NCBI RefSeq assembly: GCF_022045235.1
Contig: NW_027266297.1
Span: 53,196,001-53,260,000, forward strand
DNA: 64,000 nucleotides
Reading direction: 5' to 3'
Source of the DNA: Haliotis cracherodii
Taxonomy: Eukaryota
Part shown: in pieces, positions 1,916 through 64,000 of the stretch
Layout: each line of letters opens with the position of its first letter
Numbering within the stretch: the first letter of the stretch is position 1
Made by a program: the position numbers and the translations under genes
The notes under the pieces: generated by a model
The model's input: the letters and a program-made list of their open reading frames with translations, nothing else
Database searches by the model: none
What the model was told of the DNA's origin: nothing

Positions 1916-4900
1916 ATGCAAACAGTAAGTATCTGGATTTTCAATCCATGCATAAAATACACCTAGCAGCGTTTATAGAGCTTATGGTCTTGTTTAACTA
2001 AATAAGTTAAAATAATTATCCAGTATGGCATAACCGGCAGTCAATTATGATTAATTAGACAGTAATTTAGCAGTGCATTGTCCGATCATGATAACAATGT
2101 TTTGAATCCTTGAGTTTTGCATAATACAATAGGCTATACGGAGATGGAGATTTAACATTTTCATTTTCTTTGCAAAATGTTTTATGAAACGCTAAGGTAG
2201 CTAATGGAGCGAAATGGGCCCAGTTTGACGAAAATCCGATATCACTTTGTTATTACTTTTGTTTTGATGGTATTAATAAAAGAACCAAGGCTGCGATCAT
2301 GCATTCTTTAACCCATTTGCAAATACGTCACATCCTCATCAATGCCATATTAGGTGATTAAAATTCTGATATCCACAGAATAAACATGTCTCCTCGCGAT
2401 AAGCTACTACAAAAGGTAATAGATCAGAGGCACCTAGTTAGCGTAACGCATAACCTATGCAACACAGGTCCCGGCATAACTCTTACATCGTGTCTATCTA
2501 AACTCCTAGAGAAAATCATTTTAAGTAGAATAGAAACATATACACCCAGTAATCTCCAATCATTCCCCGATGCTTTACAATTTGGTTTCAGAAAGGAACA
2601 TGGAGCAATCATGTCTGTATTCACCGTTTTAGAATGTGTTAATTTTTACCTAGAAAGAGAATCACAAGTGTTTGCTGCATTTTTAGATAATAAAAAAGCT
2701 TTCGATCGTATTTGGCACGACGGTCTTTTTGTTAAATTACATGACCTTGGTGTGAAAGGTAAATTATGGAACTTACTTTTCCATAGCTATACAGACAGCT
2801 GTACTTTTATATCCTACAACGGAGAAAGATCTGATGAGTTTCCAATTAAACAAGGTGTTGGGCTAGGTCGAGTTATGTCAGCATGGTTCTTTCTCGTTTT
2901 CATAAATGACCTTATATGTAAACTAAGGAAAGCAAATGATGCCTCTCTGTTTATGGCATCTATATACCCTGTGTGTTATTGGCCGATGACACAACGCTCT
3001 TGTCTACAACCCCACGGGGCTTACAGTCTTCCCTTGATTCAGTTCGTTTATATGCCAACAAATGGAGACTCACCTATAATGCCTCCAAGAGTAAATCACT
3101 TGTATTCTGCAAAACACGCCAGCGCGTCATAATAAAGTAACCTACAAATTTGGCTATGCAATAATTGACACTTCCGACTCATAATAATAAACGAATAATC
3201 ATAAACAGTAATTTATCCTGTAAAGAAAGAATCATGACATGTTGCTCAAAAGCAAGAAAAAGTGTTAATTCACTACGGTCACTCGGCCTCAACGACTCAG
3301 ACCTACACCCAGTTGCATGTGTCAATATATAGAAAAGAATGATTTTATCTACAAGCTTTTAAGGATGTGAATTGTTATCAGCATTTTACGGTAAAGAACT
3401 TGAAATGATTGAATGTACACAACGTTACTTTGCTCGTCATATACAAGGATTTGGTAAAAGACATCCAACCGATTCGTCTATTTCTAACTTGGGAATGTGG
3501 TCAATGAATGGCAACATTGATAAATGTAGACTACAATTATTAGGAAGGCTCTGCAATAACGATTGTAACTCAATAACAAAAGACCTATTATGTGCTCACA
3601 TTGCTACCAACGCTATTGTCAATATTAGCCGTCCAGTAAGCATATGCAACATCCTTCTCTATACTGCTAAAAAATACCATTTGGATAACTATATAAAGGG
3701 ATATACTGATAGCGGTTCGTTCCCAACAAAATCGGCTTGGCGAGCTCTTGTAATCAGGCGTCTATCAGAGAATGAACAGTACATCTGGAGAGAGAGACTA
3801 GCACAGAGACCGGATCTTTCACGATACCATAAAATTCATAAACAGTTACAAATGCATGTTCTTTATGATGTAATGTATCTCTATCAACATCTAAGACAAC
3901 CCCTGCAACTTTGTATTAAAATCGGATCAAGAGCAAAAGTGTCGAAAGAATGTAACCATTGCAATAGATATTGCTATGACTATGATTGCCATATTATTTT
4001 GCACTGTGAAATGTTTATGCCTGATTGATAAACTTGATGTAGATGTTTTCGTGAAAATAGATATGCTTGACGATGGTGATATGCTTTCATTCTTTCTCGG
4101 TGCAGATGTCCATGACTTGACTAACGAACTTGATTACGATACTTGGCAAAGCATCATAATGACTTTCTGTCACTTCATATGGAATTAAAAGAAACACCTT
4201 ATGTATATCTACCAGACACTTTACTGCTCTCAAAATGTACATCGTAAATTATTTATTCATAGCAGTGTATAACATGATTTCATTGTATAAAGTCAAGTAA
4301 TTTCATTGATGTATTGTAAATAATGTATTTGCCCATGTAAAATCTTCGGATTCAACTCTGGAGGAAATAAAGAAATTCATTCATTCATTCATTCATTCAT
4401 TCATTCATCAATGCCATGTCCCTCATTAATAGAAACTGTTGCATCCAAGGTTATACGTATGACATCTCACAGTTGCGGATACTGATTCTTCAAACTTTAA
4501 ACTATAACTCCTTTCTGCATAACGTTTACCTGCATATCTTTGCAACTGCTAGGTCGCGATCGTGAAACAGGAAAGCAACAACAACCATTGTCAACAGAAG
4601 AAAATACATGTAGTGGAACAATGCAAACTTATAATAAGTGATAATGTGTCTGATTTGTGAAATTTGTTTTTTCGTTTGCGTAAGCCTTTTTGACTTCTCA
4701 TGAAAACTTGAGATCATAACTAATCTATCCTAATGTTTATTTTCAGCAGGGCTTCTTTGTGTCTGCGGTCATAACTATCCTAACAGGTAAACCTCATTTA
4801 TCTCATTTCGATACAAAATCTTGACAGCGCCTTTATATTTACTTTATGATAATGTGACATGGGGCTAATTGTAATCACTATTTTGTAGGTGGAACATTGG

Positions 4901-5945
4901 CCCAGAATGGGTGCAACATTAAATGTGCAGACTGCATTAGAAGTCGTTGTAGAGAGTGCTACTATGGGTACTGGGGCTCCGACTGTACACACAACTGTGT
5001 GAACTGCTGGGCTGGAGGGTGCAACAAACACACGGGCAAATGTGTCCAGTGTAGCCCTGGGCGGTATTCTACAGACTGCAGTAAGCTGTGTCCCCACAAC
5101 TGTAGATATTCAAGTCACGACAAGGTCACACACTGTGGGCGTTCTGAAGGCAGGTGTTTGGAGGGGTGTAAAGAAGGTTGGTGGGGGACGACATGCGGAA
5201 TGCCGTGCAGTACAGGGTGTAAATCTGCTTGTTATCAGGCGGACGGGGACTGTATTTCGGATTGTAGACCCGGCTGGTATGGTATGCGGTGTGACACACA
5301 GTGTTCTATGGGCTGCTTGTCAGGCACATGTGACTGGTTAACTGGCGTCTGTGTTGGCGGTTGTAAGAACGGTTATGATGGACCAAACTGTGAGGACATA
5401 TGCAGCAAAAACTGTCAATCTGCATGTCAATATGACGAAACATCTGACGGACTGTACTGCTCTGCTGGCTGTCGTGATGGGTGGACATCAGTCTACTGTA
5501 ATGAAACATGTGGGAGTAGATGTCACGTGTGTCCTCAACACAGCGGAAGCTGCACAACATGTAAGACTGGCTATTACGGCAAATCTTGTCAGCTGACATG
5601 CCCTGAGAAATGCAAAGCCTGTGATCAGACATCCGGCCTGTGTACAGAATGCATTGAAGAAAAAGTATGTGACAAACATGCCAGGTCTTACGAAGAAGCG
5701 GGGTACGGTGGAAACAGTCCAGAAGAAAACGATGTAGTGGAATCCTACAATTCTGCAGAGGGTAAGTTTTTGAGATAAAATGTATCTAATTCATAGTAAC
5801 ATAAGATATTTACAATTTCAAGAACATATATAATTCATGCTTGTATACCAACTGTTTTTGTATACTTTCAGGGCACCAAGACGATTCACGAAGATTGTTT
5901 ACTGGATTGATTCTGCTCTTTACATTTTGGACAAAATATCGTTAA
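1916..5945 (+). CDS. Gene 1: multiple-EGF-like cysteine-rich cell-surface protein (MEGF10/SCARF-like), probable GPI-type or tail anchor
   Basis: Predicted exons: 1916-1924 (MQT|gtaagt), 4747-4786 (QGFFVSAVITILT|gtaaac; NAGNAG alternative acceptor at 4750), 4889-5761 (EGF repeats CxxG[WY][WY]GxxC, ag|...|gtaagt), 5872-5945 (GHQDDSRRLFTGLILLFTFWTKYR*). Phases 0,1,1 are consistent. The spliced N-terminus MQTQGFFVSAVITILTGGTLA looks like a signal peptide. Confidence 0.8.
2349..4404 (+). mobile_element. 5'-truncated, degenerate non-LTR retrotransposon (RTE/L2/CR1-like RT) in intron 1 of gene 1
   Basis: RT motifs QFGFR, FLDxxKAFDRIWHDGL and QGV (ORF 2386-3132, then frameshifted). C-terminal CxxC..H..C (ORF 3372-4028). 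AATAAA followed by an (ATTC)n tail. 13-bp TSD TCATCAATGCCAT at 2336-2348 and 4405-4417. Confidence 0.9.
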
Positions 5946-5968
5946 GCCAATCAGTGATTTATGTTTTT

Positions 5969-9543: not shown

Positions 9544-11249
9544 TACTTAACCGCAAAAGAAACGTCACCCCAAGTAACATTGCATGAAAAGTTGTCATTT
9601 AAATATCTGGGTAATTTTTGGCAAAGTTTCTAAAACTTAACATTACCTTTTCCGGAAAAAATGAAATTTGATGATAAAAATCCACAAAGAGCGGATAACA
9701 TTCATTCGTTATTGAATAGCTACCACATGCCAAGATTGACAAGAAACCAGAGACACCAAGCCCTTCGGTGATTGCAAGCTGGACAAACCGCCCTGCAAGT
9801 AGCCAATGCATGTCAAGTCCACGTAAGGACCATATACAGGCTCCAGCAACGGTACCAGACCACCAACACTACAGATGACCGACCACGTAGTGGAAGACCA
9901 AGGGTCACCACCTGGGCAGAAGGACTGTGTGCAAAAACGCAACGGTAAAACGAACATGAAATGGACATGAAAATGCTGTGTTTCACGTGCAAGATGAACT
10001 TTAGATGTCACGTCACTGTGGTTTTCAGTTATAGTTGTGCTAAAGTTGTCAGGTTGAATACGGGAATTTAGAATAGAAACGTTGTTACAAAACAACATAG
10101 TAACTGAGTTCACATATAAAAGTAAACTTATCCACAATTAGTGGAGAAACAGTGTTCATTATAGAAGATAGTGTAATTGATAAGATGCATTAAAAGTATG
10201 AATTGTTTCAATTGTTTATTGTTTTGAATTTAGGGGTTCTTCACTACACCACCCGACGTCAGAATCGTAAGCAACTTCAAGATGAGACAGCATTTTCAAG
10301 ATCGCTTTGTTACTCCTGCGGAAACTGCTCAACAGACCATGGGGACTGACCAGCGACACATTAGTGCGTCGACGATTGACAAGCAGACACCTCCACTGTC
10401 ACAGGCCACATCAAGGACCCATTCTGACACCACGTCATCGCCGGGACCGTCTTCAGTGGGCAACATAGTACCAGCATTGGCGCCACCAGCAATTGAGAAG
10501 AGTCCTCTTCTCAGACGAGAGCCGTTACTGTATCTCAACAGCAGATGGCAGAGAGAGAGTCTGGCGACGCCGTGGGGAACGTTATTTATTCGGATGCTTG
10601 TGTTATTGTTAGAGACTCGTGGGGTGATCCGAGCATCATGGTGTGGGGTGTAATTGGTCTTGTACAGAGGGTCGGCCCTGGAGTCTTCCAGAACATCGGT
10701 CCAGGGAGAGGCAATGGTGTCACAGCAACTCGGTACATTGATCAAGTCTTGAGACCACACGCAATACCGTATTTGGCACGTTGCGAGTTTCAGCATGATA
10801 ATGCCCATGCCTACACTGCGAGAGCAACAAGAAACTTCCTCCAGCAGAATGGCATCAGAACCATGCAATGGCCTGCCCTCAGTCCCGAATTAAATCCCAT
10901 TGAGCACATGTGGGACGAGATTCAAAGACGACTGAATGACGTCCGACCAAGGCCGACAACTGCAGCTGAACTGCATCAGGCGCTCCTCAGAGTGTTGGCT
11001 CAAGTGCCTGTGGCCTTCATCAACCGCCTCATCCATATCACGCACATGGCGGACTCACGAGATACTGACTTGTGATGCCATTTATCAGAGACTAGTGTTG
11101 TGTTTCGCTTTAAGAACATTTGACACTTTAATTTCAACCTTGATGAGCAGTTGTGCCAAGTTTCATCTTTTTAATATGTCTCAAAGTATGTTTGGACAAA
11201 TAAGGTTCTCATATACTATCCATGGTGACGTTTTTTTTGCGGTTCAGTA
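9544..11249 (+). mobile_element. Degenerate Tc1-family DNA transposon
   Basis: About 26-bp TIRs (TACTTAACCGCAAAAGAAACGTCACC / GGTGACGTTTTTTTTGCGGTTCAGTA) flanked by TA. Transposase fragments MPRLTRNQR.., FSDES, FQHDNA and WPALSPELNPIEH. Frameshifted, with an unrelated insert at about 9925-10235. Confidence 0.9.
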
Positions 11250-11887: not shown

Positions 11888-14486
11888 ATGACAACACAGT
11901 CTAACCTTCTGCTGCAACTGTTGTGTTTGCGTGTTCTGGTCAACGGAATGACAGGTAAGGTCGGTTGCAAACTGATATGGCGACTCAACGCTCTTAACAA
12001 ACACATGTGCACAGATAATATGCAGTAATAAAAGGGCATCTTCCGTAACAACGTTGCTACTTGTACCTGTATCGTCCTTGTCATGTTAAAGTATGTATGT
12101 AACCCGAAGAATTGTATGTTATTCTACACAACAAGCCTTCAGTCAGAGTATCGACTTAATTTCCTCATCCCCGGGCATGGACTTGAGCGTATCTCACTTT
12201 TAATCAAAGAAAACCTTGTACACTTGTTATTTTGTGTTTCTTTCAGATGCACTGACTCCTAAGCCATTGTGTACAGGATCTCAATGCAAAGGAGATGTTT
12301 GTGTGGAGGACATGTGCCCCTTGGGGTGCAAGGATGGATATTATGGCAGGCACTGTGGATACAGATGTAGTAACGGGTGTATCAGTAAGAGGTGTTCCGA
12401 CTCTGGATTCGGCACAGGAAGCTGCACTGATGGCTGTATCTCAGGATACTGGGGAAGTACTTGTAGCTTCGAATGCCCAGTTGATTGTCTACACTGTTCA
12501 GTCAAGACATGTAGCAAATGTAGAGCGTTTCTTTTTGGACCATTCTGTAGTTCAAACTGTAGAGAAAGATGCCCAAGTAAAGGATGCAACATGGATGGTT
12601 CATGCAGGGAAGATGAGCAATCCATTGCCTGCAATAATGGAAACTTTGGGCCTAAATGCCAGTTCGGTTGCAACGAAAACTGTGCCTTTCATGCTTGCAA
12701 TCGTTCCTCTGGTATTTGTCTGCATGGTTGTGAAACAGGACATTTTGGGGCAACGTGTGAATTCCGATGTAATACCAACTGTAAAGACGCATTATGTGAT
12801 TTCCAAGGCAGGTGTCTAGCAGGCTGCAAGGCGGGGCGCTATGGGCGTGATTGTGATGAGCAGTGCAGTGGGCACTGTCGTCAACGTATCTGCGACCCGG
12901 AAACAGGTTACTGTATCAACGGCTGCCATGACGGACACTACGGCTTTCACTGCAACACGTCATGTTTGGGGGATTGCTCTTACTGCAACCGAGAGAATGG
13001 ACTATGCCTCGAAGATGAAATGCAACCAGGTAGTGTTTAAACGTAATACAATATTAAAAACAGTTCCTATCATGTAGATGACAATGACTGCATTGTGTTG
13101 CTAGTGTTTTGTTTAAAAGTTTTAACCATGTCCTAACCTAAGTACTAAACAAAAATTACTTAGCGAGAACATACACTATTGACTGGGACAAGTGAGCACT
13201 TAATCAATTAATTCAACTTGCTGTTCAAATTGCTGTTCATATATAAAGTTAGTTCCTAGTGTCCTTGCCCGTGATATAACTGGGATACAGCTTTACATCT
13301 TGTAATCCATTCCTATTATCTGGATATTGCGCATGAGGTATCCCTGGCCGAAACTTATATATATATTATATACTACAAAGACAATGCTAGCCACGTGCGT
13401 GTATAAAGCTATTTCGATTCTGTTACATCAGATTGTTTCTGAGAAAGGGTTAGTGAACTGGCATTTTTTGTTTGTGGGGATTTCGAAATACCTGTGCCTT
13501 TCGTTGGAGCTGATTGGGAATCGTTCAGACTCTGTGACTCGGCTGGCTGAGCATCATCTTGCCCCGGTAGTATTGATCATTCCGCATGCTTTCAGTCACT
13601 GGTTTGCGTAAATGCGTAGATTCCATTGATTGCCAGTCCCTGTAATACAGCTGAATTTTTCTGACTGCGACGTTAAACAACATGAATGATGATTAGCATT
13701 TCTGTTTGTAGAAACAACGCTGGTTTCCACTGAAGAAAACACCCAGACGACACCGTCAGTAAACTATGTCATAGGATCTGTTGTGTTCCTGCTGGTTTGT
13801 GGAACAGTCGCTGTCCTGATGACAAGGTACCTCACACAGCAGTGGTTTTGTGTCCACAATTTCCATGCTTTGTGTATGACACAATTTGTGTTTCCTTGAT
13901 CGGATCTCATTTGATCTATCTTTTTATTTTCAGATCATGTAAGTCATCGTTAAAAAGGAAGGACAGGCGTTTGCTGAGCCCCCAAGACAGACAACTGCCA
14001 GAAGTACCGGTGTCTGCAAATGCCTATGATGACATCAACGAAGATGACATTGATGCAAGTGATCGAGTCACTGCAGGGACCAGCAACAACACATGCCAAG
14101 TACGTTGTCATCGTCCTCTTGCTCACGTAACGATGTGTCACACTACATGGTCAAGAAAGGACAAGACTGGGCATTTGCATGTGTTCAAACCATTCCCACA
14201 GAGGGCTAGGTCCTTGCCAGTGTTCACCACTGATGTACTTGGCTGCAAATGGAACGAGTCGGGTGGTTCTTGGACGGAATATACTGGGCTTCAGGCGAGA
14301 TATGGGGATCTACATACAAAGACATTGCCTGAACGAGACGACCGAGCCAACTTGGAAGGAAATAGTTGCCTGGTTGATAACGTAGCGTTTGAACGTAGAA
14401 ATAGTGCTACATGTACTTCAGCAGGTCCGCGAGGATACCTTTCTCCTGTAGCCAGTGATTCATGTCTAGATTACACTGACGTTTAG
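11888..14486 (+). CDS. Gene 2: type-I transmembrane multiple-EGF-like receptor (SCARF/MEGF10/CED-1-like) with tyrosine-motif cytoplasmic tail
   Basis: Predicted exons: 11888-11954 (signal MTTQSNLLLQLLCLRVLVNGMT|gtaagg; acceptor 11878), 12247-13029 (EGF repeats), 13712-13826 (Thr-rich stalk plus TM YVIGSVVFLLVCGTVAVLM), 13934-14486 (basic stop-transfer KSSLKRKDRR, tail ending LDYTDV*). Phases 1,1,2 are consistent. Upstream UTR donor at 11751; AATAAA at 14579. Confidence 0.85.
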
Positions 14487-16060: not shown

Positions 16061-16098
16061 CTGGGGTAATAATTTGAGCAATCTAAATGGCATATTAC

Positions 16099-16135
<37 letters not shown>

Positions 16136-16159: not shown

Positions 16160-16359
16160 NNNNNNNNNNNNNNNNNNNNNNNNNNNNNNNNNNNNNNNNN
16201 NNNNNNNNNNNNNNNNNNNNNNNNNNNNNNNNNNNNNNNNNNNNNNNNNNNNNNNNNNNNNNNNNNNNNNNNNNNNNNNNNNNNNNNNNNNNNNNNNNNN
16301 NNNNNNNNNNNNNNNNNNNNNNNNNNNNNNNNNNNNNNNNNNNNNNNNNNNNNNNNNNN
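16160..16359. other. Assembly gap (200 N), next to a (TA)n microsatellite
   Basis: Run of N. Confidence 1.
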
Positions 16360-19216: not shown

Positions 19217-21465
19217 ATGTATAAGGTAGGTACAGGTCTGTCAAATAGAGCCATTATAGCACTGGCAAACAATCTCACATTGCAGAAGAGCGCGCAGCCA
19301 TGTGCTTTACGACCTTAGTTCTGTCAACATGGCAGTTGCTCGGGACGTGAAGTAGATTATAGTTATGCAGATGTCGCCCTTGACTACCGAATGCTTAATA
19401 GTTTAGTGTTTGCTCTCATTCGTTAACTGAGGTAACTGTAAGACGTGTTTAGTGTATTGAAGTTGCGTTTAAGAGAAGCAATTATACCACCCTTTTATTG
19501 TATATCAATGTCAAAGTAACATGTTTTATTGGCCTGTTTACTTGCGTTGGTCACTGCTATGTTATGAGTGAGTGAGTGAGTGAGTGAGTATGCATTTAGC
19601 AATATTCCAGCAATATCACGGCGGGGGACACCAGGAATGGGGAATCGAACCCGGGGCTTCGGCGTGACGAAAGGTCCGAAAAGGTGACCCGGCCGCCCCT
19701 GCTGTGTTATGGTTTGAAATATATGTATCATGTTGTTGATCACAAATATTAATTGTATTTTTGTATAATAAAATATCAATGATTGTACATGGCTTATTCC
19801 TCATTAAACCGCAATTCACTTCCAAACTTGCCCACGGTTTCCTTTCCCTCTAGTGCATAGAATTGTGTGAATCAACGGACACACGATCCCAACAGAGACA
19901 CCTTGAACTAGATTCGCGATTACATTCATGGCTTCTACTTCATGAAACTTTTTTTTATTTCAGAATACACCTGTCATTCCGGCCTGTGTGTTGATCATTC
20001 AGCTTGTCAGTTGTAAGTTGATTTTAGCCTTGACGCGGGTAAGTTGATCAAATAGCTATTTTGAGAGAGACTGAATACATAAAGGGATTAAATTGTTCCA
20101 GAACAACCTGAAAAAATAAATTGTTCGCTGGGTGTGCTGGATGGACCGGGAAAAATGAACTGTTCTTCTCCTTTCCTGTCTCTAAACAAATCCACCGCTT
20201 ACCTCGCATACTATCAAATGATAAGGTCCTACGTCCAGTATCAAAGAGTGAAAAACGTTAGACAATGGAAATCATGTATGCAGAATATTTTACTTTTTGT
20301 GTGTTCAACTCATGATGCGCTTGGTTGAAGATGTTTGCATGATTTTTGCAGATCGAACCAGTGCGAACCTCTGCGATGACTCTAGATGTAGTTCATGTGA
20401 TTCTGGCAGATGCAGTGAGTGCTTGTATGGGTACTGGGGGCCCCAGTGTAACAACGACTGTACTAGCTGCTGGTTGGCGGGCTGCCATAAACACACTGGG
20501 CGCTGTCACCAATGTCTTCCTGGCTGGTATACCGAGGACTGTGACACACTCTGTCCCAGTACCTGTCGTCTTAGCTACGACAACTTGAGAAACTGTGACC
20601 GGAGCAGCGGCAAGTGTCTGGAAGGATGCAGAGAGGGATGGTGGGGGGCCACCTGTAACATGACGTGCAGTCCAGGATGTAAGAGCAAGGCGTGCTACCA
20701 GGAGGACAGTGTCTGCATATCGGATTGCATGGAAGGGTGGCGTGGACCTAAATGTGACTGCTCGGACACATATAACTGCCGGAATGGTAGGTGCTTGTCC
20801 GGTCGTTGTACTGGTGGCTGTAAGGACGGTTGGACTGGCGAGACATGTACATATAAATGCAGCTTAAACTGCCTGACGTGCCACCAGTCCACAACTCAAT
20901 GTTCCAGTTGCAAAGAAGGTTTGTATGGCCCCGACTGCATGTCCGAGTGTACAACGAACTGCGTGGACAATAAATGTAGCATGGCAGGACACTGTATTAA
21001 TGGCTGCATCAGTGGATTCCAGGGCAGTAAATGCGAGACAGCGTGTCCCTACAGATGCCGTGACTGTGACCAAGATACGGGCAACTGCAAGATATGCTAT
21101 ACTGGATGGAGGGGACTCCAATGCAAAGAAATTGTTTCTGGCAGTTTGACAATAGATCAGTCTGTCACTGATACAACCAACCGACCATATAAACAAGGTC
21201 AGTACATTGTCTAAGGCATGTTTCTTGTAAATCTGACCTGAAAAAGTGTATGCTTATCTCAGTATGGAATAATGTGTTGTTGTGTTTAGTTCTTTAAAGT
21301 GAGTCTAAATCCATATTCTGTTACAATCTGGTAAACAATAACTATTTGTCAAGATATATACTGGTGCTTTGTTTTCTGGGGTCTGCAGATTCATCGAGTG
21401 GCTGTGCAGAGGTTAAACTAGCAACATGTGCGATGGTGTTGATGTCATCAGTTGTCTTCGAATGA
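19217..21465 (+). CDS. Gene 3: multiple-EGF-like cell-surface protein, probable GPI anchor
   Basis: Predicted exons: 19217-19225 (MYK|gtaggt), 19964-20012 (NTPVIPACVLIIQLVS|gtaagt), 20352-21197 (EGF repeats|gtcagt), 21389-21465 (DSSSGCAEVKLATCAMVLMSSVVFE*). The last exon has small omega-site residues, a spacer and a terminal hydrophobic run. TATATAA at about 19087. Confidence 0.82.
19567..19699 (-). mobile_element. tRNA-derived SINE family B copy (internally deleted)
   Basis: B box GGTTCGATTCCC and (ACTC)n tail on the minus strand. Near-perfect TSD TGCTATGTTATG / TGCTGTGTTATG. Confidence 0.8.
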
Positions 21466-38601: not shown

Positions 38602-38767
38602 GTGAGTGAGTGAGTCCGGTTTTACGCCGCTTTTAGCAATATTCCAGTAATATCACGGCGGGGGACACCAGAAATGGGCTTCACACATTGTACCCATGTC
38701 GGGAATCGAACCCGGGTCTTCGGCGTGACGAGCGAACGCTTTAATCACTAGGCTACCCGACCGCCCC
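38602..38767 (-). mobile_element. Full-length tRNA-derived SINE family B
   Basis: A box TAGCCTAGTG, GTC anticodon-like loop, B box GGTTCGATTCCC and (ACTC)n tail. TSD TGTTTAGGTTGA / TGTTTGGGTTGA. Other copies at about 18805-18930, 19567-19699, 49113-49277, 53040-53172, 55785-55932 and 61118-61260. Confidence 0.9.
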
Positions 38768-45960: not shown

Positions 45961-47063
45961 ATATTTGTATATATGTTTAATCACTAATACCTATGGATGA
46001 TGAGTCTTGAAGTTGTTATTATGGAACCAAGGGACCTTTGCCATTTTCTAGTGGTGGTCTTTTCAGTACAAAGAAATCCAGCCCATCTCATTGTAGTCCA
46101 GCTCCCGTGCCATATTCATACAGCAAACAGTTAATCGGCAGGTTTCATGACAAGTCTTGCCTCTAAAACCAGTCTACACAACCTTTAACTTTATAACCAT
46201 GGGAAGCAACTCTGCAAAGCTAATCGCCTTAAACGACTAAGACGCCCGTGCCCCCTACACATTAAAACCTTATACACATATAGTACGTCCGTGTGGGAAC
46301 AGCGAGTGCTTATTAAGCGCAAATCCTCATTCTTATAGATCAAACAGATACCGTTTTTGCCAGGAGAACATAAGGCTAAACATAGTGTATTGTCTCGGCT
46401 ACAAATGTACTATATTTGATAGTGCGGCAAGATCCTCACAAAACACCACGACCTGTTTAACGCCGGGTAACATGATGAACCTAATTGTTAGACTGTGACC
46501 CTGTTAAATACCTGCTTAAAAAGCTTTTATTAAGTCAGTTTTTACAAGCTCGGTGAGGTAGCGCTAAATTTCATGGAAAACAATATATAGTATGTTCAGA
46601 ATAGATAGAACATAATCTTCAGAGTTTCCCTAAGAAAGAATGTTAAATGGACATAAATAATGTCCCCGTGTTTGTCTTAACATTTGACAGTATTTTGTCG
46701 GAACAATATACACATGGACACATGCTGGGCCACACGCTATTGTGATACACTAGCAGCATTTATAAACACTATGCTTCAAAAATAGGTTGACAAATAAAGA
46801 TTGAGGTATTAAGAAACAAACCCTGTCTTGCTTGAAATCCAGAAATAAAGGTACTGGATAATAGAAATGAGAAGCCATATGGTAGTTAATTATGTTGTAC
46901 GCGTAATTTCATCTCTGGTCACTAAGCTGTTAACGTTTTTATGTTCGATTTGAGCCACACATGTCGAGTTAAATTATTGCGTTCCATCATTATCATTCCT
47001 TACATGAATGTTTTTGTTGTTGAAACTTTAGTTTTGTGGTTGATTTTGGTTTTACCATTGCAG

Positions 47064-48600
47064 GTGCTTCCAAGATACACAGTCCCCACTGTGCTGAGTG
47101 TGTAGAATGTCACTACGGGTGGTTTGGGCGTCAGTGGGAGCGAAAATGTGACAGCAACTGCTGGATCACTGGGTGTTATAAGGGTGTAGACGAGTTTAGG
47201 GGCAACCCTTGTCATGAAACATGCCCGATTAACTGCTTGATGTGTGAGCAAGACACAGGGAGTTGTACTGAATGTAAAATGAGTGGATTGGAATTGCATT
47301 TGCAGAGCAATATCAGAAAATGGCCAAAGTCCCCTGATTCCATCACAGAGTGTTCAAGATTCACCCATAGGTATGTGCATGTACATATCATCAAATATGT
47401 TGTAACCAAACCTGATTTATTTGCAACAGTTAGTAAATAATAATGTGTATTAACTACTTCAGTGTGAAAGACTGAAGTTGAGAAAAGTGATATTATCATT
47501 GCAGTGAACATAACACTTGATATTTCACCACGGTGAATATAACACTTCATATTTCACTGCAATGAACATAACATTTTGACGGGAATATTGTCATACAATA
47601 GTTACCTCCCCTCAAATTGTCTCCATTCATCAAGTGTCTGGCGCGTCCAAAATAGTTGACTTCCTTATTACGTTAGTACCACATTGACAAGGCAAAACAA
47701 TGACAGGCGGTCATTTATGGAGTTAATATCGTTCCTTGCCGTTTGTTATTCTCATGAAAATGATGCGTTATAAACTGCAAATTTCTAATTTAACTCGTGA
47801 ATCGCGACTGTCGGTTTCGCAAAGCTCCATTTTTGTTACATGACCACCCCGTATATTCTTTCGCTTCCAACAGCGGTCTCGGAGTTATCAAGAATATGTT
47901 TTGTTAAAATTGTTTTTGTATATATTCATAATTATCCAAATGTATGATAAAGAATGTCAATGACCTCAATTTTTTTATTACTTTTGGTTATATTTTGTAA
48001 GATTTTGCAAACTCGGAACTACTTTTTGAGTCGCAATTCCAAGGGTTGGTGAACAATGCGTTTTAGGTAGGGAGAATTTACGTTTCAACGTTTGTATTTG
48101 CATTGAAAAATAATTCCGGAAGACAACTAAACATAAAGTATATAATAAATAGGATATTCCATGTGTCTCGTGACACATTGTTACCTTCATCGACTGACGG
48201 TGAAAAGGTGATACATGTATTTTCACGAGTGGTGTGATTTACTTTCAATAGTTAGTAAATAACAACTTATAGCTAAAATATATTTTTTCGATAATGACTG
48301 TTAGGGCAGTTATATCTATTTGCGGGTAAAACAGTGACAACGTGAAGGAATGTTTTAATATTTATACGCAGCATTTACTGAAATGCATCTAATGTTTAGA
48401 TATATTGCTTTGTGTATTGGTACCTTATGTATCCCTTCCTTATTTCAGGTGTTGGGTGCAGATCTCTGTAATGATTACTCTATCCACAAACATTAGTTGT
48501 ATTGATGTCGTAACTAAGTTATTTATCGCATCTGTTCTTGTAATACAGAAGGCGGTCAGCATCGGAAATACAACATATCTCTAAAGATTGCTACCCATTG
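47064..48600 (+). pseudogene. Gene 5: chimeric, internally deleted EGF-family pseudogene
   Basis: EGF exon 47064-47370 keeps both splice sites but has lost most repeats, has a Cys-to-Trp change and a frameshift. Last exon from 48449 has a deletion and early stop (GVGCRSL*). First-exon relic at about 46840-46885. Confidence 0.8.
47441..48249. mobile_element. Unclassified insertion (probable MITE) in the gene 5 intron
   Basis: Absent from the paralogous intron of gene 4. Flanked by the direct repeat AGTTAGTAAATAA. Confidence 0.55.
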
Positions 48601-49112
48601 TTATACGCTGGTTCCTATATTTGTAAACTGGCGGTTCCAAGGGCCATCAATATCATGTGTAAATCCAGCACAGATCACTTACCTATTTTCAAGAAACGTA
48701 GCTAACTCAATGGTCTCTTGTTCAAATTTTGCTGTAAATATTGGAGGACAGTTGATATCCGTTCATCTAATGTTAGAGTCACTATTAGCTCGTTGCTCCA
48801 CCAGCTTGAAAAGCGAGATGATTTCTGCCATTTTGTTGAATGTTGTCCAATGTGGAATCCACACATCTCAGACTTGGCACACCAATACACCTTTGAGAGT
48901 GCCCACATTAATATCATTTGGTATTATTGGTTACTGGTTTAAATCTAACCCGGTGTTTGATGTGCAGTGAACATATGTGTTCAGTAATCGTTTAAGTGTC
49001 TTTACAATAACATTTTTATGTTTAGGATTTGGCAATTTGGAATACAACACAACAGAAAGTGTGTTCAGAGAATGGCGATTATATATCTCTTAAATCAATC
49101 CTTTATCAAATG

Positions 49113-50897: not shown

Positions 50898-51113
50898 NNN
50901 NNNNNNNNNNNNNNNNNNNNNNNNNNNNNNNNNNNNNNNNNNNNNNNNNNNNNNNNNNNNNNNNNNNNNNNNNNNNNNNNNNNNNNNNNNNNNNNNNNNN
51001 NNNNNNNNNNNNNNNNNNNNNNNNNNNNNNNNNNNNNNNNNNNNNNNNNNNNNNNNNNNNNNNNNNNNNNNNNNNNNNNNNNNNNNNNNNNNNNNNNNNN
51101 NNNNNNNNNNNNN
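50898..51113. other. Assembly gap (216 N)
   Basis: Run of N. Confidence 1.
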
Positions 51114-52555
51114 GCGCGTTCAGCTAAAAACGGAAACATGTGCCCTTCGTTGCTTTGATGAATTCCGAAGTACTCCGTGGGGATTCAAGGGTATTGAATG
51201 GGGCCCATGTAACCTCTTCTTGTCGTGAGAGGCGATTAAGACAGATCAAGTGGTCAGATTGAGGAAACGTGCATTTATATGTCACACGTTACATAAGCTG
51301 TGTATGTACAAACATTAGGCATATAATTGAAAAGTAAATTCCAGGCATTTAATGTTTATGATACACACTTAGACAGTGAAACACATATATACATAAAATA
51401 TAAGAAGGATACTATTTGTATCCTGTGTAAAACAATATTTCGCATGGTATATTTCAGTCACATCGTGAGGAGAGAAGGTTCTATTTTAAAAGTAAATGCT
51501 CTTAGACTGTATAAAATCTTGTCGTCGAAGGACAGTAAAACAACTAGAACATCGCAGATTTTATGTATAACTAGTATGTAACCATAAAAAGATATTACTA
51601 TACAGAACAATACAGATCGCCAGCAACTGAAGGTAGATCAGCATACTGGGGACCATGCTACGTGCATGGACCCAAACAGGATTTACACCATCCCTTGAAT
51701 AAAGGCGATTGTACGCAGGCTAACCACAATTAAAATGACAAATATTCTGCGCTCCAAGTAGTAGATAAAAATGCATGGAGAGTGTCTAGACAAATGGGTT
51801 TCCAAAATTAAAACGGGGCGTGTTTAAATATTCTTTGAATGACATGGACTTAGGATATCCCATCATGGCGACATTCATTTCAACTACTGCGATTCTGTAA
51901 CACCGCTTTGAAAAACATTCAGCTCGTTAAATTCTCTTTCATTGTTGATACAGTTTGCTCTACGATTTAGGTGTTTCACCATTGAACCCACCGTGAATGG
52001 TATGAAGTAGTTGCCGGTGTCTGAAGACTCTCGTCATTCATTGCGTATTATTACTGCCAGTCACACATGTAATGTGTGTATTTGTGTACACAAAGTCAGA
52101 GGAGTCGTCGATACGGTTGTCAGATATGTGTACAGTACGGCACTCTTTTGAGTATTTGTACCTAAAGTGACAGCAACTCGTCAAGTGGATATTTCATTAC
52201 ATTACGGATATCATTAACTACGACTTTGCAAGGTACGTAATTTCACACAAGAAATACGGTTTCCACCTGATCTGAGGGTTGACGAACTGGTAAACACAAC
52301 CCCTAGAGCTGTGTCTACCTTTACCCGGAACCCGGATGATCTTGTTTCTAGAAATTGTTGATTTGTGTTGTCGTACTTCCACGTTGTTGCTCCAATATCA
52401 ATGACTGGTTTGTCTGGTCCAGAATCGATTGTTTTCTGATCGCCGCTAGATAGCTAGAACATTGCTGCACGGCGGTGTTAAACAACTCTCATTCATTCAA
52501 GTCATATCAAAACAACTATGTTCCAGGTGCATGTCTCGAATGACAAGCCGTCACT

Positions 52556-54449
52556 ATGGCCCAAATTGGACGAATAACTTTAGTAAGTGGATATCTTGTT
52601 TTTATATATTTGCTTCAAATGACAGGTCTATAACGGTATATGAATATTAACAACTTACCTTTATAAACTGTACTTCGTTATGTTCATTTTAGCTATAATG
52701 GATGCTAAATATGGGATATTCAGGCCCATTTTAGTTATTTCGAAATATTTGCAATAAGCCTTACTTAACGAATGGTCAAATGTGACAATGATGAGTAAAT
52801 GAATTGTGCTTCATTTTCCCCTTTAGGGTGTTCTAGTGACAGTGGTTGGGATCGTCGTAGATACAGCAGGTGGGTATTCAGTCTGTGTTTCATAATTTCA
52901 TATTTAGCATGGGCAGTACTTGGATGGGTAATTAATTAACACGTGAAACACCGAACTATGTTAATCTGCCTGATAGCACGGTTCTACCCTGAGCACGTGA
53001 TCACTAGCTGGTTGGTCTCATGCTTGCTTCATCTTATAACGGGGCAATAGAGTAGCCTAGTGGTTAAAGCGTTAACTCGTCAAGGTTCGAGTACAATGTG
53101 AGCAGCTAATTTTTGGTGTCCCCCGCCGTGATGTTGCTGGAATTTACGGACGTTAGACTATTACTCACTCACTTACTGCATCTTCAATTTTTAGGTGCAG
53201 CTGATGTGGACATTGGAATGTGCATGAGAGAGTCCAATGGCAACTGTCTTGAGTGTCAGTATGGATGGTATGGGCCTCAGTGTTTGAATAAATGTCGATT
53301 TTGCTCGACCACTGGATGTGATCAAACAGGGATCTGTGAACAATGTCAGGCTGGTAGCTCTGGGAAATATTGTAACTCCAGTTGCCCTGATCACTGCAGA
53401 CCGGCTAGAGATGGAAGTGTGAACTGTGAACGGGATACTGAGAAGTGCCAGGAAGGATGTATGCGTGGCTGGTGGGGGGACACGTGTAACCAAACATGTA
53501 GCACACACTGTAGGCAGGGAGCATGTCTCCAGATCAATGGGGACTGTATAGGTGATTGTGAGGATGGTTGGTCTGGAGTCCAGTGTAATACAGCATGTCC
53601 ACAAGGATGTGTAAATAAAAGATGTTCTTTCCATGGCAAATGCTTCGATGGTTGCAGTGCTGGTCTGTGGGGAGAGGAATGTGATAAGACTTGTAGTAAG
53701 GCTACCTCAAAGTGCTTCCAGGGTAATGGCACCCGTACGGGTGAGTGTAAGGACGGATGGTACGGATTGCAATGCGATGCAGTCTGTTCTGTAGGTTGCC
53801 TGACGAGGAAATGTGATGCACGATCAGGGAGGTGCGAAGGTGGATGCAAAGTAGGTACCTATGGGGAAACATGTGACCGTGAATGTAGCTCACAGTGTCG
53901 GGGTTCACAGTGTGATACTAGTGGAAGGTGTTTGCAAGGTTGTGAAGCAGGATTTCAGGGCAGCTCTTGCACAGCAGCATGTCCCTTCAACTGCCTGACA
54001 TGTGAACAAGACGCAGATGTCTGCACAGGGTGCAAAATAGGATTGACTGGAACTCGTTGTCAATCAGCTCAGCCTGATATTTCAGGTTTGTATTCCTCTG
54101 ATTGCTAAGTACAACTGTAACATATCGTTCAGCCATGTGCATATATAATCAAGAAGAGTTATCTATAATGAGCTACGATGTGTGTTAAGCTTTAAGCTAT
54201 GTTCTAACAGTCGTTACATATATTTGCTTCAAATTGAAGATTCCTATTAACTTCAAGAAAAGGCAATGGTGATAATAAAACTAAGATACATGCATTACTG
54301 CATAGTTTGACACAAATGATAATAACATACCTATTCTCTCCATTTCAGGTAGCAGATGCTTCTATATTGATACTATTTTAATTGAAGCCTCAGTGATAAT
54401 CAGTTTGATCGGTGAGGCCGTACTGAATAGATGCACATCATCAGTTTGA
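52556..54449 (+). CDS. Gene 6: multiple-EGF-like cell-surface protein, short hydrophobic C-terminus (GPI-like)
   Basis: Predicted exons: 52556-52582 (MAQIGRITL|gtaagt), 52827-52869 (GVLVTVVGIVVDTA|gtgggt), 53195-54085 (EGF repeats|gtttgt), 54349-54449 (GSRCFYIDTILIEASVIISLIGEAVLNRCTSSV*). Confidence 0.8.
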
Positions 54450-61117: not shown

Positions 61118-61260
61118 GTGTGTGAGTGAGTATAGTTTTACGCCGCTTTTAGCAATATTCCAGCAATATCACGGCGGTTGACACCGGAAAATTGGCTTGA
61201 CACATTGTACCTATGTGAGGAATCGAACCCGTGACGAGCCAACGCTTTTAACCGCTATGT
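61118..61260 (-). mobile_element. tRNA-derived SINE family B copy
   Basis: B box and tail; perfect 14-bp TSD CCTCTCCACCTTTA (61104-61117, 61261-61274). Confidence 0.88.
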
Positions 61261-61712: not shown

Positions 61713-64000
61713 ATGACACAGCTTTACCATATGCCACTAAAACATCTAGTAAGTAATAACCACTGTTTTAATGTCATATATGCCAACGATGATTATAAGC
61801 CCCAATCCAGAGACCTGAGTGTTGTAGTGTATCTGTAATGCGTCTATGTTACAGTTACAGGTGAATCCTACACAGCTATATGAAATTGGTAAAAGAAATG
61901 CCTCAAGTCTTTGTTTCTTCCTAGTGTTTGATGCTGTCCCTGTACGCTGGACCAGCAGCAGTCGCAGGTAATTTTGTGTGATATACTTCTTAGAAAATGA
62001 CAAAATGAACTACTCTGGAAATGTTTTAGTTTTAGCCTTCATAGAGTGTTATAATACCACGTATATCTCAACAGTACTGATGGGCACGGGTGGCCATGTG
62101 GTCTGGGTTGTCGAACTTGTCTGGACATGGCAGCGTCCTAGTCACCATGTGAGGATCCGCTGATTGAGGTTTCGCATCTCTGGTTCTCATTGGTTAGCAT
62201 CACCATGAGTTTCACCAAAGTGGAACATATCTTTTAAGTTTTGAACGTCCTCCTTCAATTAAGCTAACAAAGTAAACTAACATACACAATTATTTGTGCT
62301 GTTTATTTTGCTATCATTTTAACTGGCGCCACATTGCAAAGTTTGAACAATATTATATATCGTTCTGATTTATCCCATTTCATGGATACGGCGGTTATTG
62401 AACTACACATGACCCAGTGTGCTCGACGGCAATATGACAACTGTGTGGATGGTTACAAGGTGGGGAGGGATGCTGGGGAGAGACGTGTAACAGAACTGTG
62501 AAGTCAGAACATGTTATCAAGGGACCGGTAATTGCATTGGTAACTGTAGGGCGAGATGGCACGGCCAGCGTCGTAGGAAATTTTTTTCAATTGATGTTCC
62601 TTAATAAAATTGGTGAAACTATGTAAATTAGCATGGTATTAATATAGTTCAAGATACCAAAAATAATTTGTGAATTGATCTTGATCTTACCATTACAGGT
62701 GCTTCCAAGATACACAATCCCCACTGTGCGAGGTGGCATAGTGGTCAATGTGTGGAATGTTACTACGGGTGGTTTGGACCTCAGTGTGAGAGAAAGTGTG
62801 ACAGGAACTGCTGGACCACTGGGTGTTATAAGGGTACAGGGATCTGTGAACAATGTGTGCCGGGTAGATACGGAAGACATTGTAAAACAAGATGTCCTGA
62901 CAACTGTAGATCGGGTAGAGACGGGACTGTGAACTGTGATCGGGTCGGCGGGAGATGCCAGGAGGGGTGTAAGGAAGATTGGTGGGGAGACACGTGTAGC
63001 AAGCGATGTAATAGTAACTGTAAGAGGGGGGCATGTATCCAGCAATCAGGACATTGTATCGGTGACTGCACACATGGCTGGCACGGATTGCACTGTGACA
63101 AACAGTGTTCAGTTGGGTGTCGTGGAAACCGCTGCAGTTGTGTGACAGGGGTATGTACGCATGGGTGTGGGAAAGGCTGGTCAGGTGAAACATGTGAAGA
63201 GCAAGAACAGCGAAGAGAATGTAGTGCCACGTGTAAAACGCATGAGTGTGATACGAATGGGAGGTGTTTGAAAGGATGTATACATGGATTCAGAGGCAGC
63301 TCCTGTAACGAAACATGTCCGGTGAATTGCCACATTTGTCAACAAGACACAACGTCATGCACGAGATGCGAACACGGATGGCAGGGACCTATCTGTACCA
63401 GCAGAACTATCACACATCATCATCATCGTCCGTCCAAAAAGGAACCGATATTCGACTCACTTGATTCCCCAGCTGTACCAAAAGGTATGTATATCACAAC
63501 CGATAGTGAAGCAGTCAGTCTAATCAAAATGAATGTTTCGGTCCAACTGCTTAACAAATGGATCCATCAAATCATTGTACTTTAATGGACCATCGGACAT
63601 TGAAGTAGTTTAGCTGAGGAATATATCCTGGTTAGTTGAATTCAATATATTGATGATGTATGTTCCTTTAACATAGAAATGAAAACCAAAGACGAAGAAT
63701 AATGCCTTTGCTTGTTAATGTTTTGGTATCATTCTCTTCCTTTCAGGTAGGGCGAACAGCAGGAATAATGGCAACGTGTTGCTGGTCCTGGTAGCTGTGA
63801 TTATCAGTGCAATGGGTCACATTGATCTGTCATGTTATGCCTATGAAACAGTCCGAATACAAGGAACCGTACGATACATCTTACAAAAGTTACGGCTACA
63901 CGTAAAACGGTTGTGTGTGCAGATTGCATGTCATGAGTGTACACTAGTTCATGCGTTTGTAAATTGGCGGTTCCAAAGGCCGTCAATATCAGATTGTATG
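61713..64000 (+). CDS. Gene 7: multiple-EGF-like cell-surface protein, closest to gene 4; last exon open to the window end
   Basis: Predicted exons: 61713-61748 (MTQLYHMPLKHL|gtaagt), 61925-61967 (CLMLSLYAGPAAVA|gtaatt), 62699-63484 (EGF repeats, HHHH linker|gtatgt), 63747 to beyond 64000 (GRANSRNNGNVLLVLVAVIISAMGHID... with no stop in the window). Confidence 0.8.
62385..62578 (+). pseudogene. Dead EGF pseudo-exon inside intron 2 of gene 7
   Basis: Remnants QCARRQYDNCVD, GCWGETCN and CYQGTGNCIGNCRARWHGQ with indels. The acceptor-like CCCATTTCAT lacks AG. Confidence 0.7.

What the first reader, a model, noticed from the sequence alone, without database searches (positions are those of the whole stretch)
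1916..64000. Tandem cluster of single-exon-ectodomain EGF receptors: one signalling receptor among several apparently non-signalling, GPI-like paralogues
Seen: six intact-looking genes and several dead copies. All have tiny signal-peptide exons, one large phase-1/1 exon holding the whole EGF ectodomain, and an anchor exon. Genes 1, 3, 4, 6 and 7 share an N-terminal signature (C.EC.YG[WY].G..C...C..C...GC...TG.C.QC..G) and a variable loop (CRYSSHDKVTHC, CRLSYDNLRNC, CRPGRDGTVNC, CRPARDGSVNC, CRSGRDGTVNC). Only the divergent gene 2 has a TM helix plus a long Tyr-motif tail. Established: MEGF10, CED-1, Draper and SCARF are EGF-repeat engulfment/scavenger receptors, normally multi-exon in the ectodomain and transmembrane. 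Inference: this is a birth-and-death recognition locus (innate immune, allorecognition or gamete recognition) organised as sensors or decoys plus a signalling partner. Automated annotation would probably call all of them just 'MEGF10-like'.
Basis: partly seen in the sequence, partly recalled or inferred. Interest (0 to 1): 0.85.

Follow-up and report, generated by a model that had tools for sequence, protein, structure and literature searches.

The report
Abalone cluster of SCARF-like EGF receptors
This black-abalone window holds six real, separately spliced genes for cell-surface proteins made of scavenger-receptor-type EGF repeats, one with a long signalling-type tail, two with short tails and three with none; they are ordinary members of a very large, already auto-annotated abalone family.

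Summary
Six + strand genes each carry the whole EGF array (41-50 Cys) on one phase-1/phase-1 exon, with tiny signal exons upstream and a C-terminal exon downstream. All introns are GT..AG.

- **Genome:** Haliotis cracherodii.
- **Support for the models:** my g1 and g3 models are identical to RefSeq proteins. g2 is the C-terminal 505 aa of one. g6 is absent from the protein database searched, but spliced RNA contigs confirm it junction for junction. g4 and g7 rest on orthologues in other abalones.
- **Dead copies:** two are clear.
- **Assembly gaps:** both are intergenic.

- **g2** alone has a 20-residue TM helix and a 183-aa tail. Its tyrosine motifs are conserved in four Haliotis species.
- **g1, g3 and g6** end in 24-33-residue, weakly hydrophobic peptides with no cytoplasmic domain. 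They look GPI-like, but this is untested.
- **g4 and g7** are not tail-less. A 14-17-residue hydrophobic run is followed by 60-80 residues with a conserved FVNWRFQRPSIS end. In this assembly g4 is frameshifted before that motif.

The paralogue lineages predate the Haliotis species splits. The family has at least 181 genomic matches. Nothing links g2 functionally to its neighbours. The closest functional analogue is the insect Nimrod tethering/docking system. The scan noted the same cluster in the adjoining window.

The parts
1916..5945 (+). g1: exons 1916-1924 (ATG, 3 codons), 4747/4750-4786 (signal core, NAGNAG alternative acceptor), 4889-5761 (EGF array), 5872-5945 (24-aa C-terminal peptide plus stop). 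331 aa.
   Evidence: My model is identical to H. cracherodii RefSeq protein P0158 (XP_071118001); the isoform is P0159. Intron 1 holds a reverse-transcriptase fragment at 2386-4028.
11888..14486 (+). g2: exons 11888-11954 (signal), 12247-13029 (EGF array), 13712-13826 (stalk plus 20-residue TM helix), 13934-14486 (183-aa tail ending LDYTDV). 505 aa from the internal Met.
   Evidence: Equals the C-terminal 505 aa of RefSeq P0180. Orthologues P0172, P0173, P0174 and P0184 in three other Haliotis species have the same architecture. The tail exon is unique in the genome.
10908..11072 (+). Tc1/mariner transposase remnant that RefSeq uses as the first 55 codons of its g2 model.
   Evidence: P0180 residues 1-55 map here at 100%. 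The ORF 10545-11075 hits DDE_3. The H. rufescens orthologue starts directly at the signal peptide.
19217..21465 (+). g3: exons 19217-19225, 19964-20012, 20352-21197 (EGF array), 21389-21465 (25-aa C-terminal peptide plus stop). 326 aa.
   Evidence: My model is identical to RefSeq P0186. Orthologues in H. rubra (P0187) and H. asinina (P0026) also end in a short, weakly hydrophobic peptide.
40611..42518 (+). g4: exons 40611-40652, 40908-40950, 41182-41934 (EGF array), 42205-42518 (hydrophobic run plus about 80 aa). A one-base frameshift near 42359-42363, relative to the H. rufescens orthologue, puts the conserved C-terminal motif out of frame.
   Evidence: 94% identity to P0006 (XP_046327749) over the EGF exon. 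Exon mapping is, the frameshift, and the GT..AG model.
47045..47390 (+).
   Evidence: tblastn of the EGF exons against the window.
48581..48655 (+). Tail remnant of the dead copy; it still encodes an FVNWRFQ-like motif.
   Evidence: tblastn with the g7 terminal exon and with P0006/P0009.
52527..54449 (+). g6: exons 52527-52582 (ATG at 52556), 52827-52869, 53195-54085 (EGF array, 50 Cys), 54349-54449 (33-aa C-terminal peptide plus stop). The 3' UTR continues to at least 54651. An upstream 5' UTR exon ends at 52232. 353 aa.
   Evidence: Spliced contigs of runs X1, X2 and X4 give GT..AG joints at all four introns, exactly at the predicted sites. No close protein was found in the database. No near-identical paralogue exists in the assembly.
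61713..64000 (+). g7: exons 61713-61748, 61925-61967, 62699-63484 (EGF array), 63747-64030 (hydrophobic run plus 70 aa ending FVNWRFQRPSIS...). The last 30 bases lie beyond the window (L001:3747-4030). 382 aa.
   Evidence: Homology to H. rubra P0009 (XP_046557048) across the signal, EGF and tail parts. GT..AG model.
62461..62600 (+). Dead EGF fragment with stop codons inside g7 intron 2.
   Evidence: tblastn.
16160..16359 (.). Assembly gap 1, intergenic between g2 and g3.
   Evidence: N run. No exon or EGF match is adjacent.
50898..51113 (.). Assembly gap 2, intergenic between the dead copy and g6.
   Evidence: N run. The first RNA-supported g6 exon piece starts at 52104.

Best explanation
This is part of a tandem cluster on one Haliotis cracherodii chromosome. 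The EGF matches span about 190 kb and I counted at least 15 genes from their positions. The cluster is conserved across the genus. It encodes surface proteins whose whole ectodomain is an array of 6-8 scavenger-receptor-F-type EGF repeats on a single symmetric exon. The six genes in the window are independent transcription units that differ mainly in their membrane end.

- **g2** is a canonical type-I receptor. It has a 20-residue TM helix and a 183-aa tail with conserved NAYDDI, GYLSP and terminal LDYTD[V/F] motifs. The last is an LxYxxV ITIM-like site overlapping a class-I PDZ ligand.
- **g4 and g7** have a short hydrophobic run followed by 60-80 residues with a conserved FVNWRFQRPSIS end.
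- **g1, g3 and g6** stop 1-11 residues after a weak 9-14-residue hydrophobic stretch, so they have no cytoplasmic domain.

The most likely working model is inferred, not shown. The EGF arrays bind polyanionic or particulate ligands on haemocytes or epithelia. The tail-less forms act as GPI-anchored or shed tethering or decoy molecules. The tailed forms internalise or signal on their own. This resembles the tethering/docking split in the insect Nimrod family.
For: - **Gene structures.**. The g1 and g3 models are identical to RefSeq, and g2 is contained in RefSeq.
- **g6 expression.** g6 is spliced in RNA contigs of two organisms.
- **Family identity.** The best solved-structure match is SCARF1, 8hna, E 8.8e-9. 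Pfam gives only EGF_TEN and EGF_laminin: of the seven hits, only EGF_laminin on g4 (25.1 vs 21 bits) clears its curated cut-off. There is no EMI domain.
- **Family size and cluster extent.** 181 matches and 1749 first-look candidates, with cluster members from 53.129 to 53.319 Mb.
- **Orthologues and tree.**
- **C-terminal analysis.** The best 19-residue hydropathy window (mean Kyte-Doolittle score, KD19) is 2.48 for g2, 0.33 for g1, 1.67 for g3 and 1.84 for g6. Residues after the hydrophobic run number 3, 1 and 11 for g1, g3 and g6.
- **Conservation of the ends.** The g1 terminal peptide is 24/24 identical in H. rufescens. Conserved tail-less ends also occur in a neighbouring clade.
- **g2 tail.** Its motifs are invariant in five sequences from four species.
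- **Family-wide anchors.** Among 150 family representatives, 79 have a TM helix plus tail and a minority have short C-terminal hydrophobic ends.
- **Analogue.** The tethering versus docking concept in the Nimrod family: PMC6852320.
Against: - No GPI predictor or wet test was available. The g1 end (13 hydrophobic residues followed by TKYR) also looks like a truncated TM helix plus stop-transfer. The g6 hydrophobic stretch contains two Glu residues.
- No tissue, haemocyte or challenge expression data were obtained, because run metadata were coded.
- No ligand is known.
- g4 may be decaying in this species, given the tail frameshift.
- An immune role is assumed by analogy only.
Confidence: 0.6

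Rival explanations
1. One reading: g1, g3, g4, g6 and g7 are sensors or decoys that work through g2 as their shared signalling partner, in a fast birth-and-death recognition locus (immune, allorecognition or gamete recognition).
For: - g2 is the only long-tailed receptor in the window.
- Three neighbours lack a cytoplasmic domain.
- Dead copies and transposons are present.
- g6 shows two divergent haplotypes in RNA of the same organism.
Against: - The g2 EGF array is the outgroup, at 33% identity, and lacks the shared N-terminal signature.
- g4 and g7 have their own tails.
- Paralogue lineages are old, with orthologues across Haliotis.
- Notes on the adjoining window report further tailed receptors just beyond the window (not checked here).
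- No binding test was made.
Confidence: 0.12
2. The proteins are cell-adhesion, developmental or matrix molecules rather than immune receptors. Examples would be MEGF10/11-style homotypic recognition, or EGF-rich secreted or shell-associated proteins. On this reading the tail-less forms are simply secreted.
For: - EGF arrays of this type serve adhesion and self-avoidance in vertebrates (MEGF10/11; established knowledge).
- 46 of 150 family representatives show no hydrophobic end after the last EGF repeat.
- The C-terminal peptides of g3 and g6 are only weakly hydrophobic.
Against: - The short C-terminal peptides are conserved between species. This argues that they are used, for example as anchor signals.
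- The SCARF1-like repeats and the tyrosine-motif tail of g2 fit an uptake receptor.
Confidence: 0.22
3. Several of the 'intact' genes are decaying copies with no function, namely g4 (tail frameshift) and g6 (no protein in the database, long branch). The anchor diversity would then be erosion of an ancestral TM-plus-tail gene.
For: - g4 is frameshifted relative to H. rufescens.
- The g6 branch is the longest in its clade and no orthologue was found.
- The g1 end resembles a truncated TM/stop-transfer segment of tailed relatives.
Against: - g6 is spliced correctly in two organisms, and the second organism keeps the frame through 6- and 3-base indels.
- All 41-50 cysteines and all splice sites are intact.
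- Tail-less ends are conserved across species.
Confidence: 0.06

Closest known systems
Scavenger receptor class F (SCARF1/SREC-I, SCARF2)
   Same: - The ectodomain is made only of EGF-like repeats.
- SCARF1 is the best solved-structure match (8hna).
- RefSeq names most of these genes SCARF1/2-like.
- g2 is a single-pass type-I protein.
   Different: - There is no long Ser/Pro-rich cytoplasmic domain. The g2 tail is 183 aa with 15% Ser plus Pro.
- Three members have no cytoplasmic part at all.
- The whole array sits on one exon.
- The family is hugely expanded.
MEGF10 / MEGF11 / PEAR1 / Draper / CED-1 engulfment receptors
   Same: - Same type of EGF repeat.
- Single-pass receptor with tyrosine motifs in the tail (g2).
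- Several orthologues carry these names in RefSeq.
   Different: - No N-terminal EMI domain.
- No NPxY motif, and the YxxL site in g2 is not conserved.
- The ectodomains are much shorter.
Drosophila Nimrod family and gene cluster (NimA, NimB1-5, NimC1-4; Eater, Draper)
   Same: - A tandem cluster of EGF-type repeat proteins that mixes transmembrane, tail-less and secreted members.
- A documented split between tethering receptors without an intracellular domain (SIMU/NimC4) and docking or signalling receptors (Draper) (PMC6852320).
- Secreted NimB members modulate uptake (bioRxiv 10.1101/2025.01.07.631694, listed).
   Different: - This is an independent expansion in a mollusc.
- I did not test the repeats against the NIM consensus.
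- No functional data exist here.
Other black-abalone receptor families built on the same EGF module
   Same: The same genome holds families with a SCARF-like EGF stalk or ectodomain joined to lectin heads, ankyrin, STAND NTPase or phosphatase tails. The adjoining window holds further members of this very cluster.
   Different: The genes here are EGF-only, with minimal or no intracellular parts apart from g2.

Membership tests
MEGF10/Draper/CED-1 | N-terminal EMI domain | tested here: not met
   A Pfam scan of all six EGF exons at E<=0.01 gives only EGF_TEN and EGF_laminin, with no EMI. The signal exons are 3-22 codons and leave no room for one.
MEGF10/Draper/CED-1 | Cytoplasmic NPxY and YxxL engulfment motifs | tested here: not met
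   The g2 tail has no NPxY. Its one YxxL (YTGL) is absent in H. rubra and H. asinina. The other genes have short tails or none.
SCARF (class F scavenger receptors) | Ectodomain of SCARF-type EGF-like repeats | tested here: met
   A profile of the six exons hits SCARF1 chain 8hna_B best, at E 8.8e-9, over 148 profile positions.
SCARF (class F scavenger receptors) | Single TM helix followed by a long Ser/Pro-rich cytoplasmic domain | tested here: not met
   Only g2 has a clear TM helix (KD19 2.48). Its tail is 183 aa with 15% Ser plus Pro. g1, g3 and g6 have no tail.
GPI-anchored surface proteins (g1, g3, g6) | N-terminal signal peptide plus a hydrophobic stretch at the extreme C-terminus, with no cytoplasmic residues | tested here: inconclusive
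   - Signal exons are present.
- Hydrophobic runs are 13, 14 and 9 residues, with 3, 1 and 11 residues after them.
- g3 fits best. g1 ends in TKYR. The g6 stretch holds two Glu residues.
GPI-anchored surface proteins (g1, g3, g6) | Small omega and omega+2 residues about 9-10 positions before the hydrophobic tail | tested here: met
   By inspection of the C-termini printed: g1 has A-E-G, g3 has D/S-S-S, and g6 has S-G-S, each 9-10 residues upstream and at the last exon junction. This is inspection only, not a trained predictor.
GPI-anchored surface proteins (g1, g3, g6) | Positive call by a dedicated predictor, or release by PI-PLC | not testable with these tools
   No NetGPI, PredGPI or bench assay was available.
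Nimrod family | NIM repeat consensus after a CCxGY motif | not tested
   Nimrod is used only as a functional analogue.

The most novel reading that the evidence does not exclude
The cluster is a molluscan tethering/docking recognition system. GPI-anchored, polymorphic EGF-array sensors (g1, g3, g6) capture ligands, and tailed members (g2, g4/g7 and the EGF-less adaptor-like paralogue noted next door) transduce. g6 would be kept polymorphic by balancing selection. Two haplotypes differ at 10 of 184 bases, and the alternative one shares its states with a second Haliotis species.
Probability: 0.12. Interest if true: 0.7.

Novelty: new member of a known kind. Interest (0 to 1): 0.4.

Why it matters
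Black abalone is critically endangered, largely through an infectious disease (withering syndrome; my own knowledge, not checked here). Its innate recognition repertoire is almost unstudied. This locus gives a clean, partly RNA-verified set of gene models for a SCARF-like family that the automated annotation names inconsistently. Orthologues carry five different vertebrate names, one model starts in a transposon, and g6 has no protein in the database searched.

If the tail-less members are GPI-anchored tethers working beside tailed receptors, the cluster would be a molluscan counterpart of the insect Nimrod system. It would also offer a tractable place to study how anchor type evolves after duplication. 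As it stands, it is an ordinary lineage-specific receptor cluster.

Tried and rejected
- **Paralogue DNA comparison.** Comparing g4 and g7 to find small exons mostly picked up a tRNA-derived SINE (38598-38742 and 61114-61248). That element is not an exon.
- **The 50-nt conserved block.** The block at 42418-42466 and 63956-64005 first looked non-coding, because the frames differ in this assembly. Orthologue proteins showed it encodes the C-terminal FVNWRFQRPSIS motif, and that g4 is frameshifted here.
- **Ab initio signal-exon scans.** These gave mostly false candidates. Homology and RNA resolved the exons instead.
- **Profile search with the six-exon alignment.** It returned few close relatives, though it did find the g2 orthologues.
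- **Gene conversion from g4 into g6.** Only 3 of 5 alternative bases match g4, so the test was inconclusive.
- **Homologues of the tails.** No further homologue of the g2 tail, or of the g1, g3 or g6 terminal exons, was found in the genome or in the extended 90 kb.
- **Literature.** Searches found no description of this abalone family.
- I redid it from references.
- **Joined models.** Spliced models were translated only inside scripts to check frames.
- **Complex prediction.** Not used, because I do not claim that g2 binds its neighbours.


Full report
**What is there**

The window is G000:C34:53196001-53260000 of a 1.18-Gb genome. The contig length, 73,386,740, equals that recorded for RefSeq proteins of Haliotis cracherodii. 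Two of my gene models turned out identical to H. cracherodii RefSeq proteins. The genome is therefore black abalone.

Six long + strand open frames encode cysteine-rich EGF arrays with 41-50 Cys each. They are 33-47% identical to g1 in the alignment, and g4 and g7 are 67% identical to each other.

Each array is bounded by a phase-1 AG acceptor and a phase-1 G|GT donor. Pfam sees only EGF_TEN and EGF_laminin: of the seven hits, only EGF_laminin on g4 (25.1 vs 21 bits) clears its curated cut-off, and there is no EMI domain. The best solved-structure relative is human SCARF1 (8hna, E 8.8e-9).

**Gene models**

I mapped database proteins onto the window and read the junctions. All six genes resolve into four coding exons with GT..AG introns and one terminal stop.

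| Gene | Coding exons | Length | Support |
|---|---|---|---|
| g1 | 1916-1924, 4747-4786, 4889-5761, 5872-5945 | 331 aa | Identical to XP_071118001. A NAGNAG acceptor gives the second RefSeq isoform. |
| g2 | 11888-11954, 12247-13029, 13712-13826, 13934-14486 | 505 aa | The C-terminal part of XP_071118430. |
| g3 | 19217-19225, 19964-20012, 20352-21197, 21389-21465 | 326 aa | Identical to the RefSeq protein P0186. |
| g4 | 40611-40652, 40908-40950, 41182-41934, 42205-42518 | 383 aa | Orthologue in H. rufescens. |
| g6 | 52556-52582, 52827-52869, 53195-54085, 54349-54449 | 353 aa | Spliced RNA contigs. |
| g7 | 61713-61748, 61925-61967, 62699-63484, 63747-64030 | 382 aa | Orthologue in H. rubra. 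The last 30 bases are beyond the window. |

**RNA evidence for g6**

g6 had no close protein in the 5.8-billion-protein search, so I used the one reads look-up on it. Runs X1-X3 hold 29-46% of the words of 52800-54500.

Their contigs, and those of a second organism (X4), skip 52233-52526, 52583-52826 and 52870-53194. The contigs of X1 and X2 also skip 54086-54348. All joints have GT..AG ends and sit exactly at my predicted junctions. The EGF exon is joined only to its own terminal exon, and contig pieces lie on 54403-54651.

g6 is therefore expressed and correctly spliced. The second organism keeps the frame through 6- and 3-base deletions.

**Assembly gaps**

Both gaps (16160-16359 and 50898-51113) lie between genes. 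No exon, frame or EGF match touches them. They affect only spacing and the possibility of unseen copies.

**Dead copies and transposons**

- A g4/g7-like EGF exon at 47045-47390 has a large internal deletion, a Cys-to-Trp change and a frame change. Its tail remnant is at 48581-48655.
- An EGF fragment with stops lies at 62461-62600, inside g7 intron 2.
- Reverse-transcriptase fragments lie at 2386-3132 and 6109-6570. Tc1/mariner transposases lie at 10545-11075, 26000-27031, 35038-35550 and 36440-37489.

**The membrane ends**

- **g2** has a 20-residue uncharged helix (KD19 2.48, the best 19-residue Kyte-Doolittle hydropathy mean) and a 183-aa tail.
- **g7** and its H. rubra orthologue have a 14-17-residue hydrophobic run (KD19 2.1-2.2), followed by 60-70 residues ending FVNWRFQRPSIS.
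- **The H. rufescens orthologue of g4** has the same ending. In this assembly g4 carries one extra base near 42359-42363, so the motif is out of frame. I could not check this against reads.
- **g1** ends 3 residues after a 13-residue run (KD19 0.33). **g3** ends 1 residue after a 14-residue run. **g6** ends 11 residues after a weak stretch that contains two Glu residues.

So g1, g3 and g6 have no cytoplasmic domain, on RefSeq or RNA evidence. In all three, small residues (A-E-G, D/S-S-S, S-G-S) sit 9-10 positions before the hydrophobic stretch, at the exon junction. That is the layout of a GPI signal, but it is inspection only. The g1 end (…FWTKYR) also resembles the TM/stop-transfer end of tailed relatives such as P0098 (…FWKYRR…).

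The short ends are conserved:
- g1 is 24/24 identical in H. rufescens.
- g3-type ends occur in H. rubra and H. asinina.
- A neighbouring clade ends …SVARII[KT]T in three species.

Among 150 family representatives, 79 have a TM helix plus a tail of at least 20 aa, 9 have a TM helix with a short tail, 4 have a short C-terminal hydrophobic end, and 46 have none by my crude rule.

**g2**

Orthologues exist in H. rufescens (95% identical to g2), H. rubra (70-72%) and H. asinina (65%). They share the architecture and have invariant NAYD-IN-E, PRGYLSPVASD and CLDYTD[V/F] motifs.

The last motif is LxYxxV in H. cracherodii and H. rufescens, and ends in a T-D-[V/F] PDZ-type terminus. There is no NPxY. 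The tail exon is unique in the genome.

The RefSeq model of g2 begins with 55 codons of a Tc1 transposase remnant. The H. rufescens protein starts at the signal peptide.

**Evolutionary setting**

- A protein search of the genome with the g4 exon gives 181 matches from 1749 first-look candidates. Many sit in open frames of 300-700 aa on at least ten contigs. Cluster members run from 53.129 to 53.319 Mb, around and beyond the window.
- A maximum-likelihood tree of 32 sequences pairs g1 and g4 with H. rufescens proteins, g7 with an H. rubra protein, g3 with H. rubra and H. asinina proteins, and g2 with orthologues in all three species.
- The paralogue lineages are therefore older than these species splits. 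This is a conserved cluster with some loss and decay, not a rapidly turning-over array.
- g2 groups apart from the other five. g6 sits on a long branch with no orthologue in my sample.
- RefSeq accession numbers and shared contigs indicate that the g2, g7-like and neighbouring genes are also linked in H. rubra.

**Function**

Nothing here shows function. The best-supported mechanism is by analogy:
- SCARF-type EGF arrays are uptake or adhesion ectodomains.
- g2 has the make-up of an endocytic or signalling receptor.
- The tail-less members can only act by tethering, by decoying, or through a partner.

The insect Nimrod family shows exactly this division. It is a clustered EGF-repeat family with tethering receptors lacking an intracellular domain (SIMU/NimC4), docking receptors (Draper) and secreted NimB proteins (PMC6852320; titles).

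I found no evidence that g2 in particular is the partner of its neighbours. It is the most divergent member. g4 and g7 have tails of their own. Notes on the adjoining window report further tailed paralogues and an EGF-less, adaptor-like one (not checked by me).

**Comparison and novelty**

- The genes are not MEGF10/Draper/CED-1 members, because they lack EMI and NPxY.
- They are not typical SCARFs, because they lack a long Ser/Pro tail.
- They are SCARF-like EGF-only proteins of a mollusc-expanded family that RefSeq already models under assorted vertebrate names.
- I found no paper on them.
- Other notes of this scan show the same EGF module attached to many other domains in this genome.

I rate this a new member of a known kind and moderately interesting. 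The interest lies mainly in the conserved tail-less forms, the mixed anchors within one cluster, and the g6 polymorphism.

Noticed in passing
window 53814-54028 (g6 EGF exon, 3' part): RNA contigs of organism A carry two haplotypes. One is identical to the reference and the other differs at 10 of 184 bases. The first 650 bases of the exon differ at only 4 sites. Of the seven listed alternative bases, four change the amino acid, and all seven are the state seen in organism B. No near-identical paralogue exists in the assembly.
   Followed up: partly
window 42359-42363 (g4 terminal exon): One extra base relative to the H. rufescens orthologue shifts the frame. The conserved C-terminal FVNWRFQRPSIS motif is then read in another frame. 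This is either a real tail change in black abalone or an assembly error. I did not check it against reads.
   Followed up: partly
window 10908-11072 and 11878-11954: The RefSeq g2 model (XP_071118430, 563 aa) takes its first 55 codons from a Tc1/mariner transposase remnant. H. cracherodii lacks the first ATG that the H. rufescens orthologue uses, and probably starts at the next Met (11888).
   Followed up: partly
window 42418-42466, 48581-48655, 63956-64005: A block of about 50 nt encoding FVNWRFQRPSIS is 92% identical between g4 and g7, which is much more conserved than the rest of their tails. It survives even in the dead copy. The motif is restricted to this subclade in the genome.
   Followed up: partly
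window 62268-62600 (g7 intron 2): Upstream of the dead EGF fragment, an open frame reads like a g1-type signal end fused directly to the start of an EGF exon (…AIILTGATLQ…). This may be the remains of an older copy without its intron. It is unexplained.
   Followed up: no
window 38598-38742, 53041-53145, 55662-56049, 61114-61248: Copies of a tRNA-derived SINE sit in and around the genes. The copies at 53041-53145 and 55662-56049, within the stretch laid, attract very high contig depth in all RNA-like runs and cause spurious joints between copies.
   Followed up: partly
window 4747-4750 (g1 exon 2 acceptor): A NAGNAG tandem acceptor (CAG|CAG) explains the two RefSeq isoforms, which differ by one Gln in the signal peptide.
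   Followed up: yes
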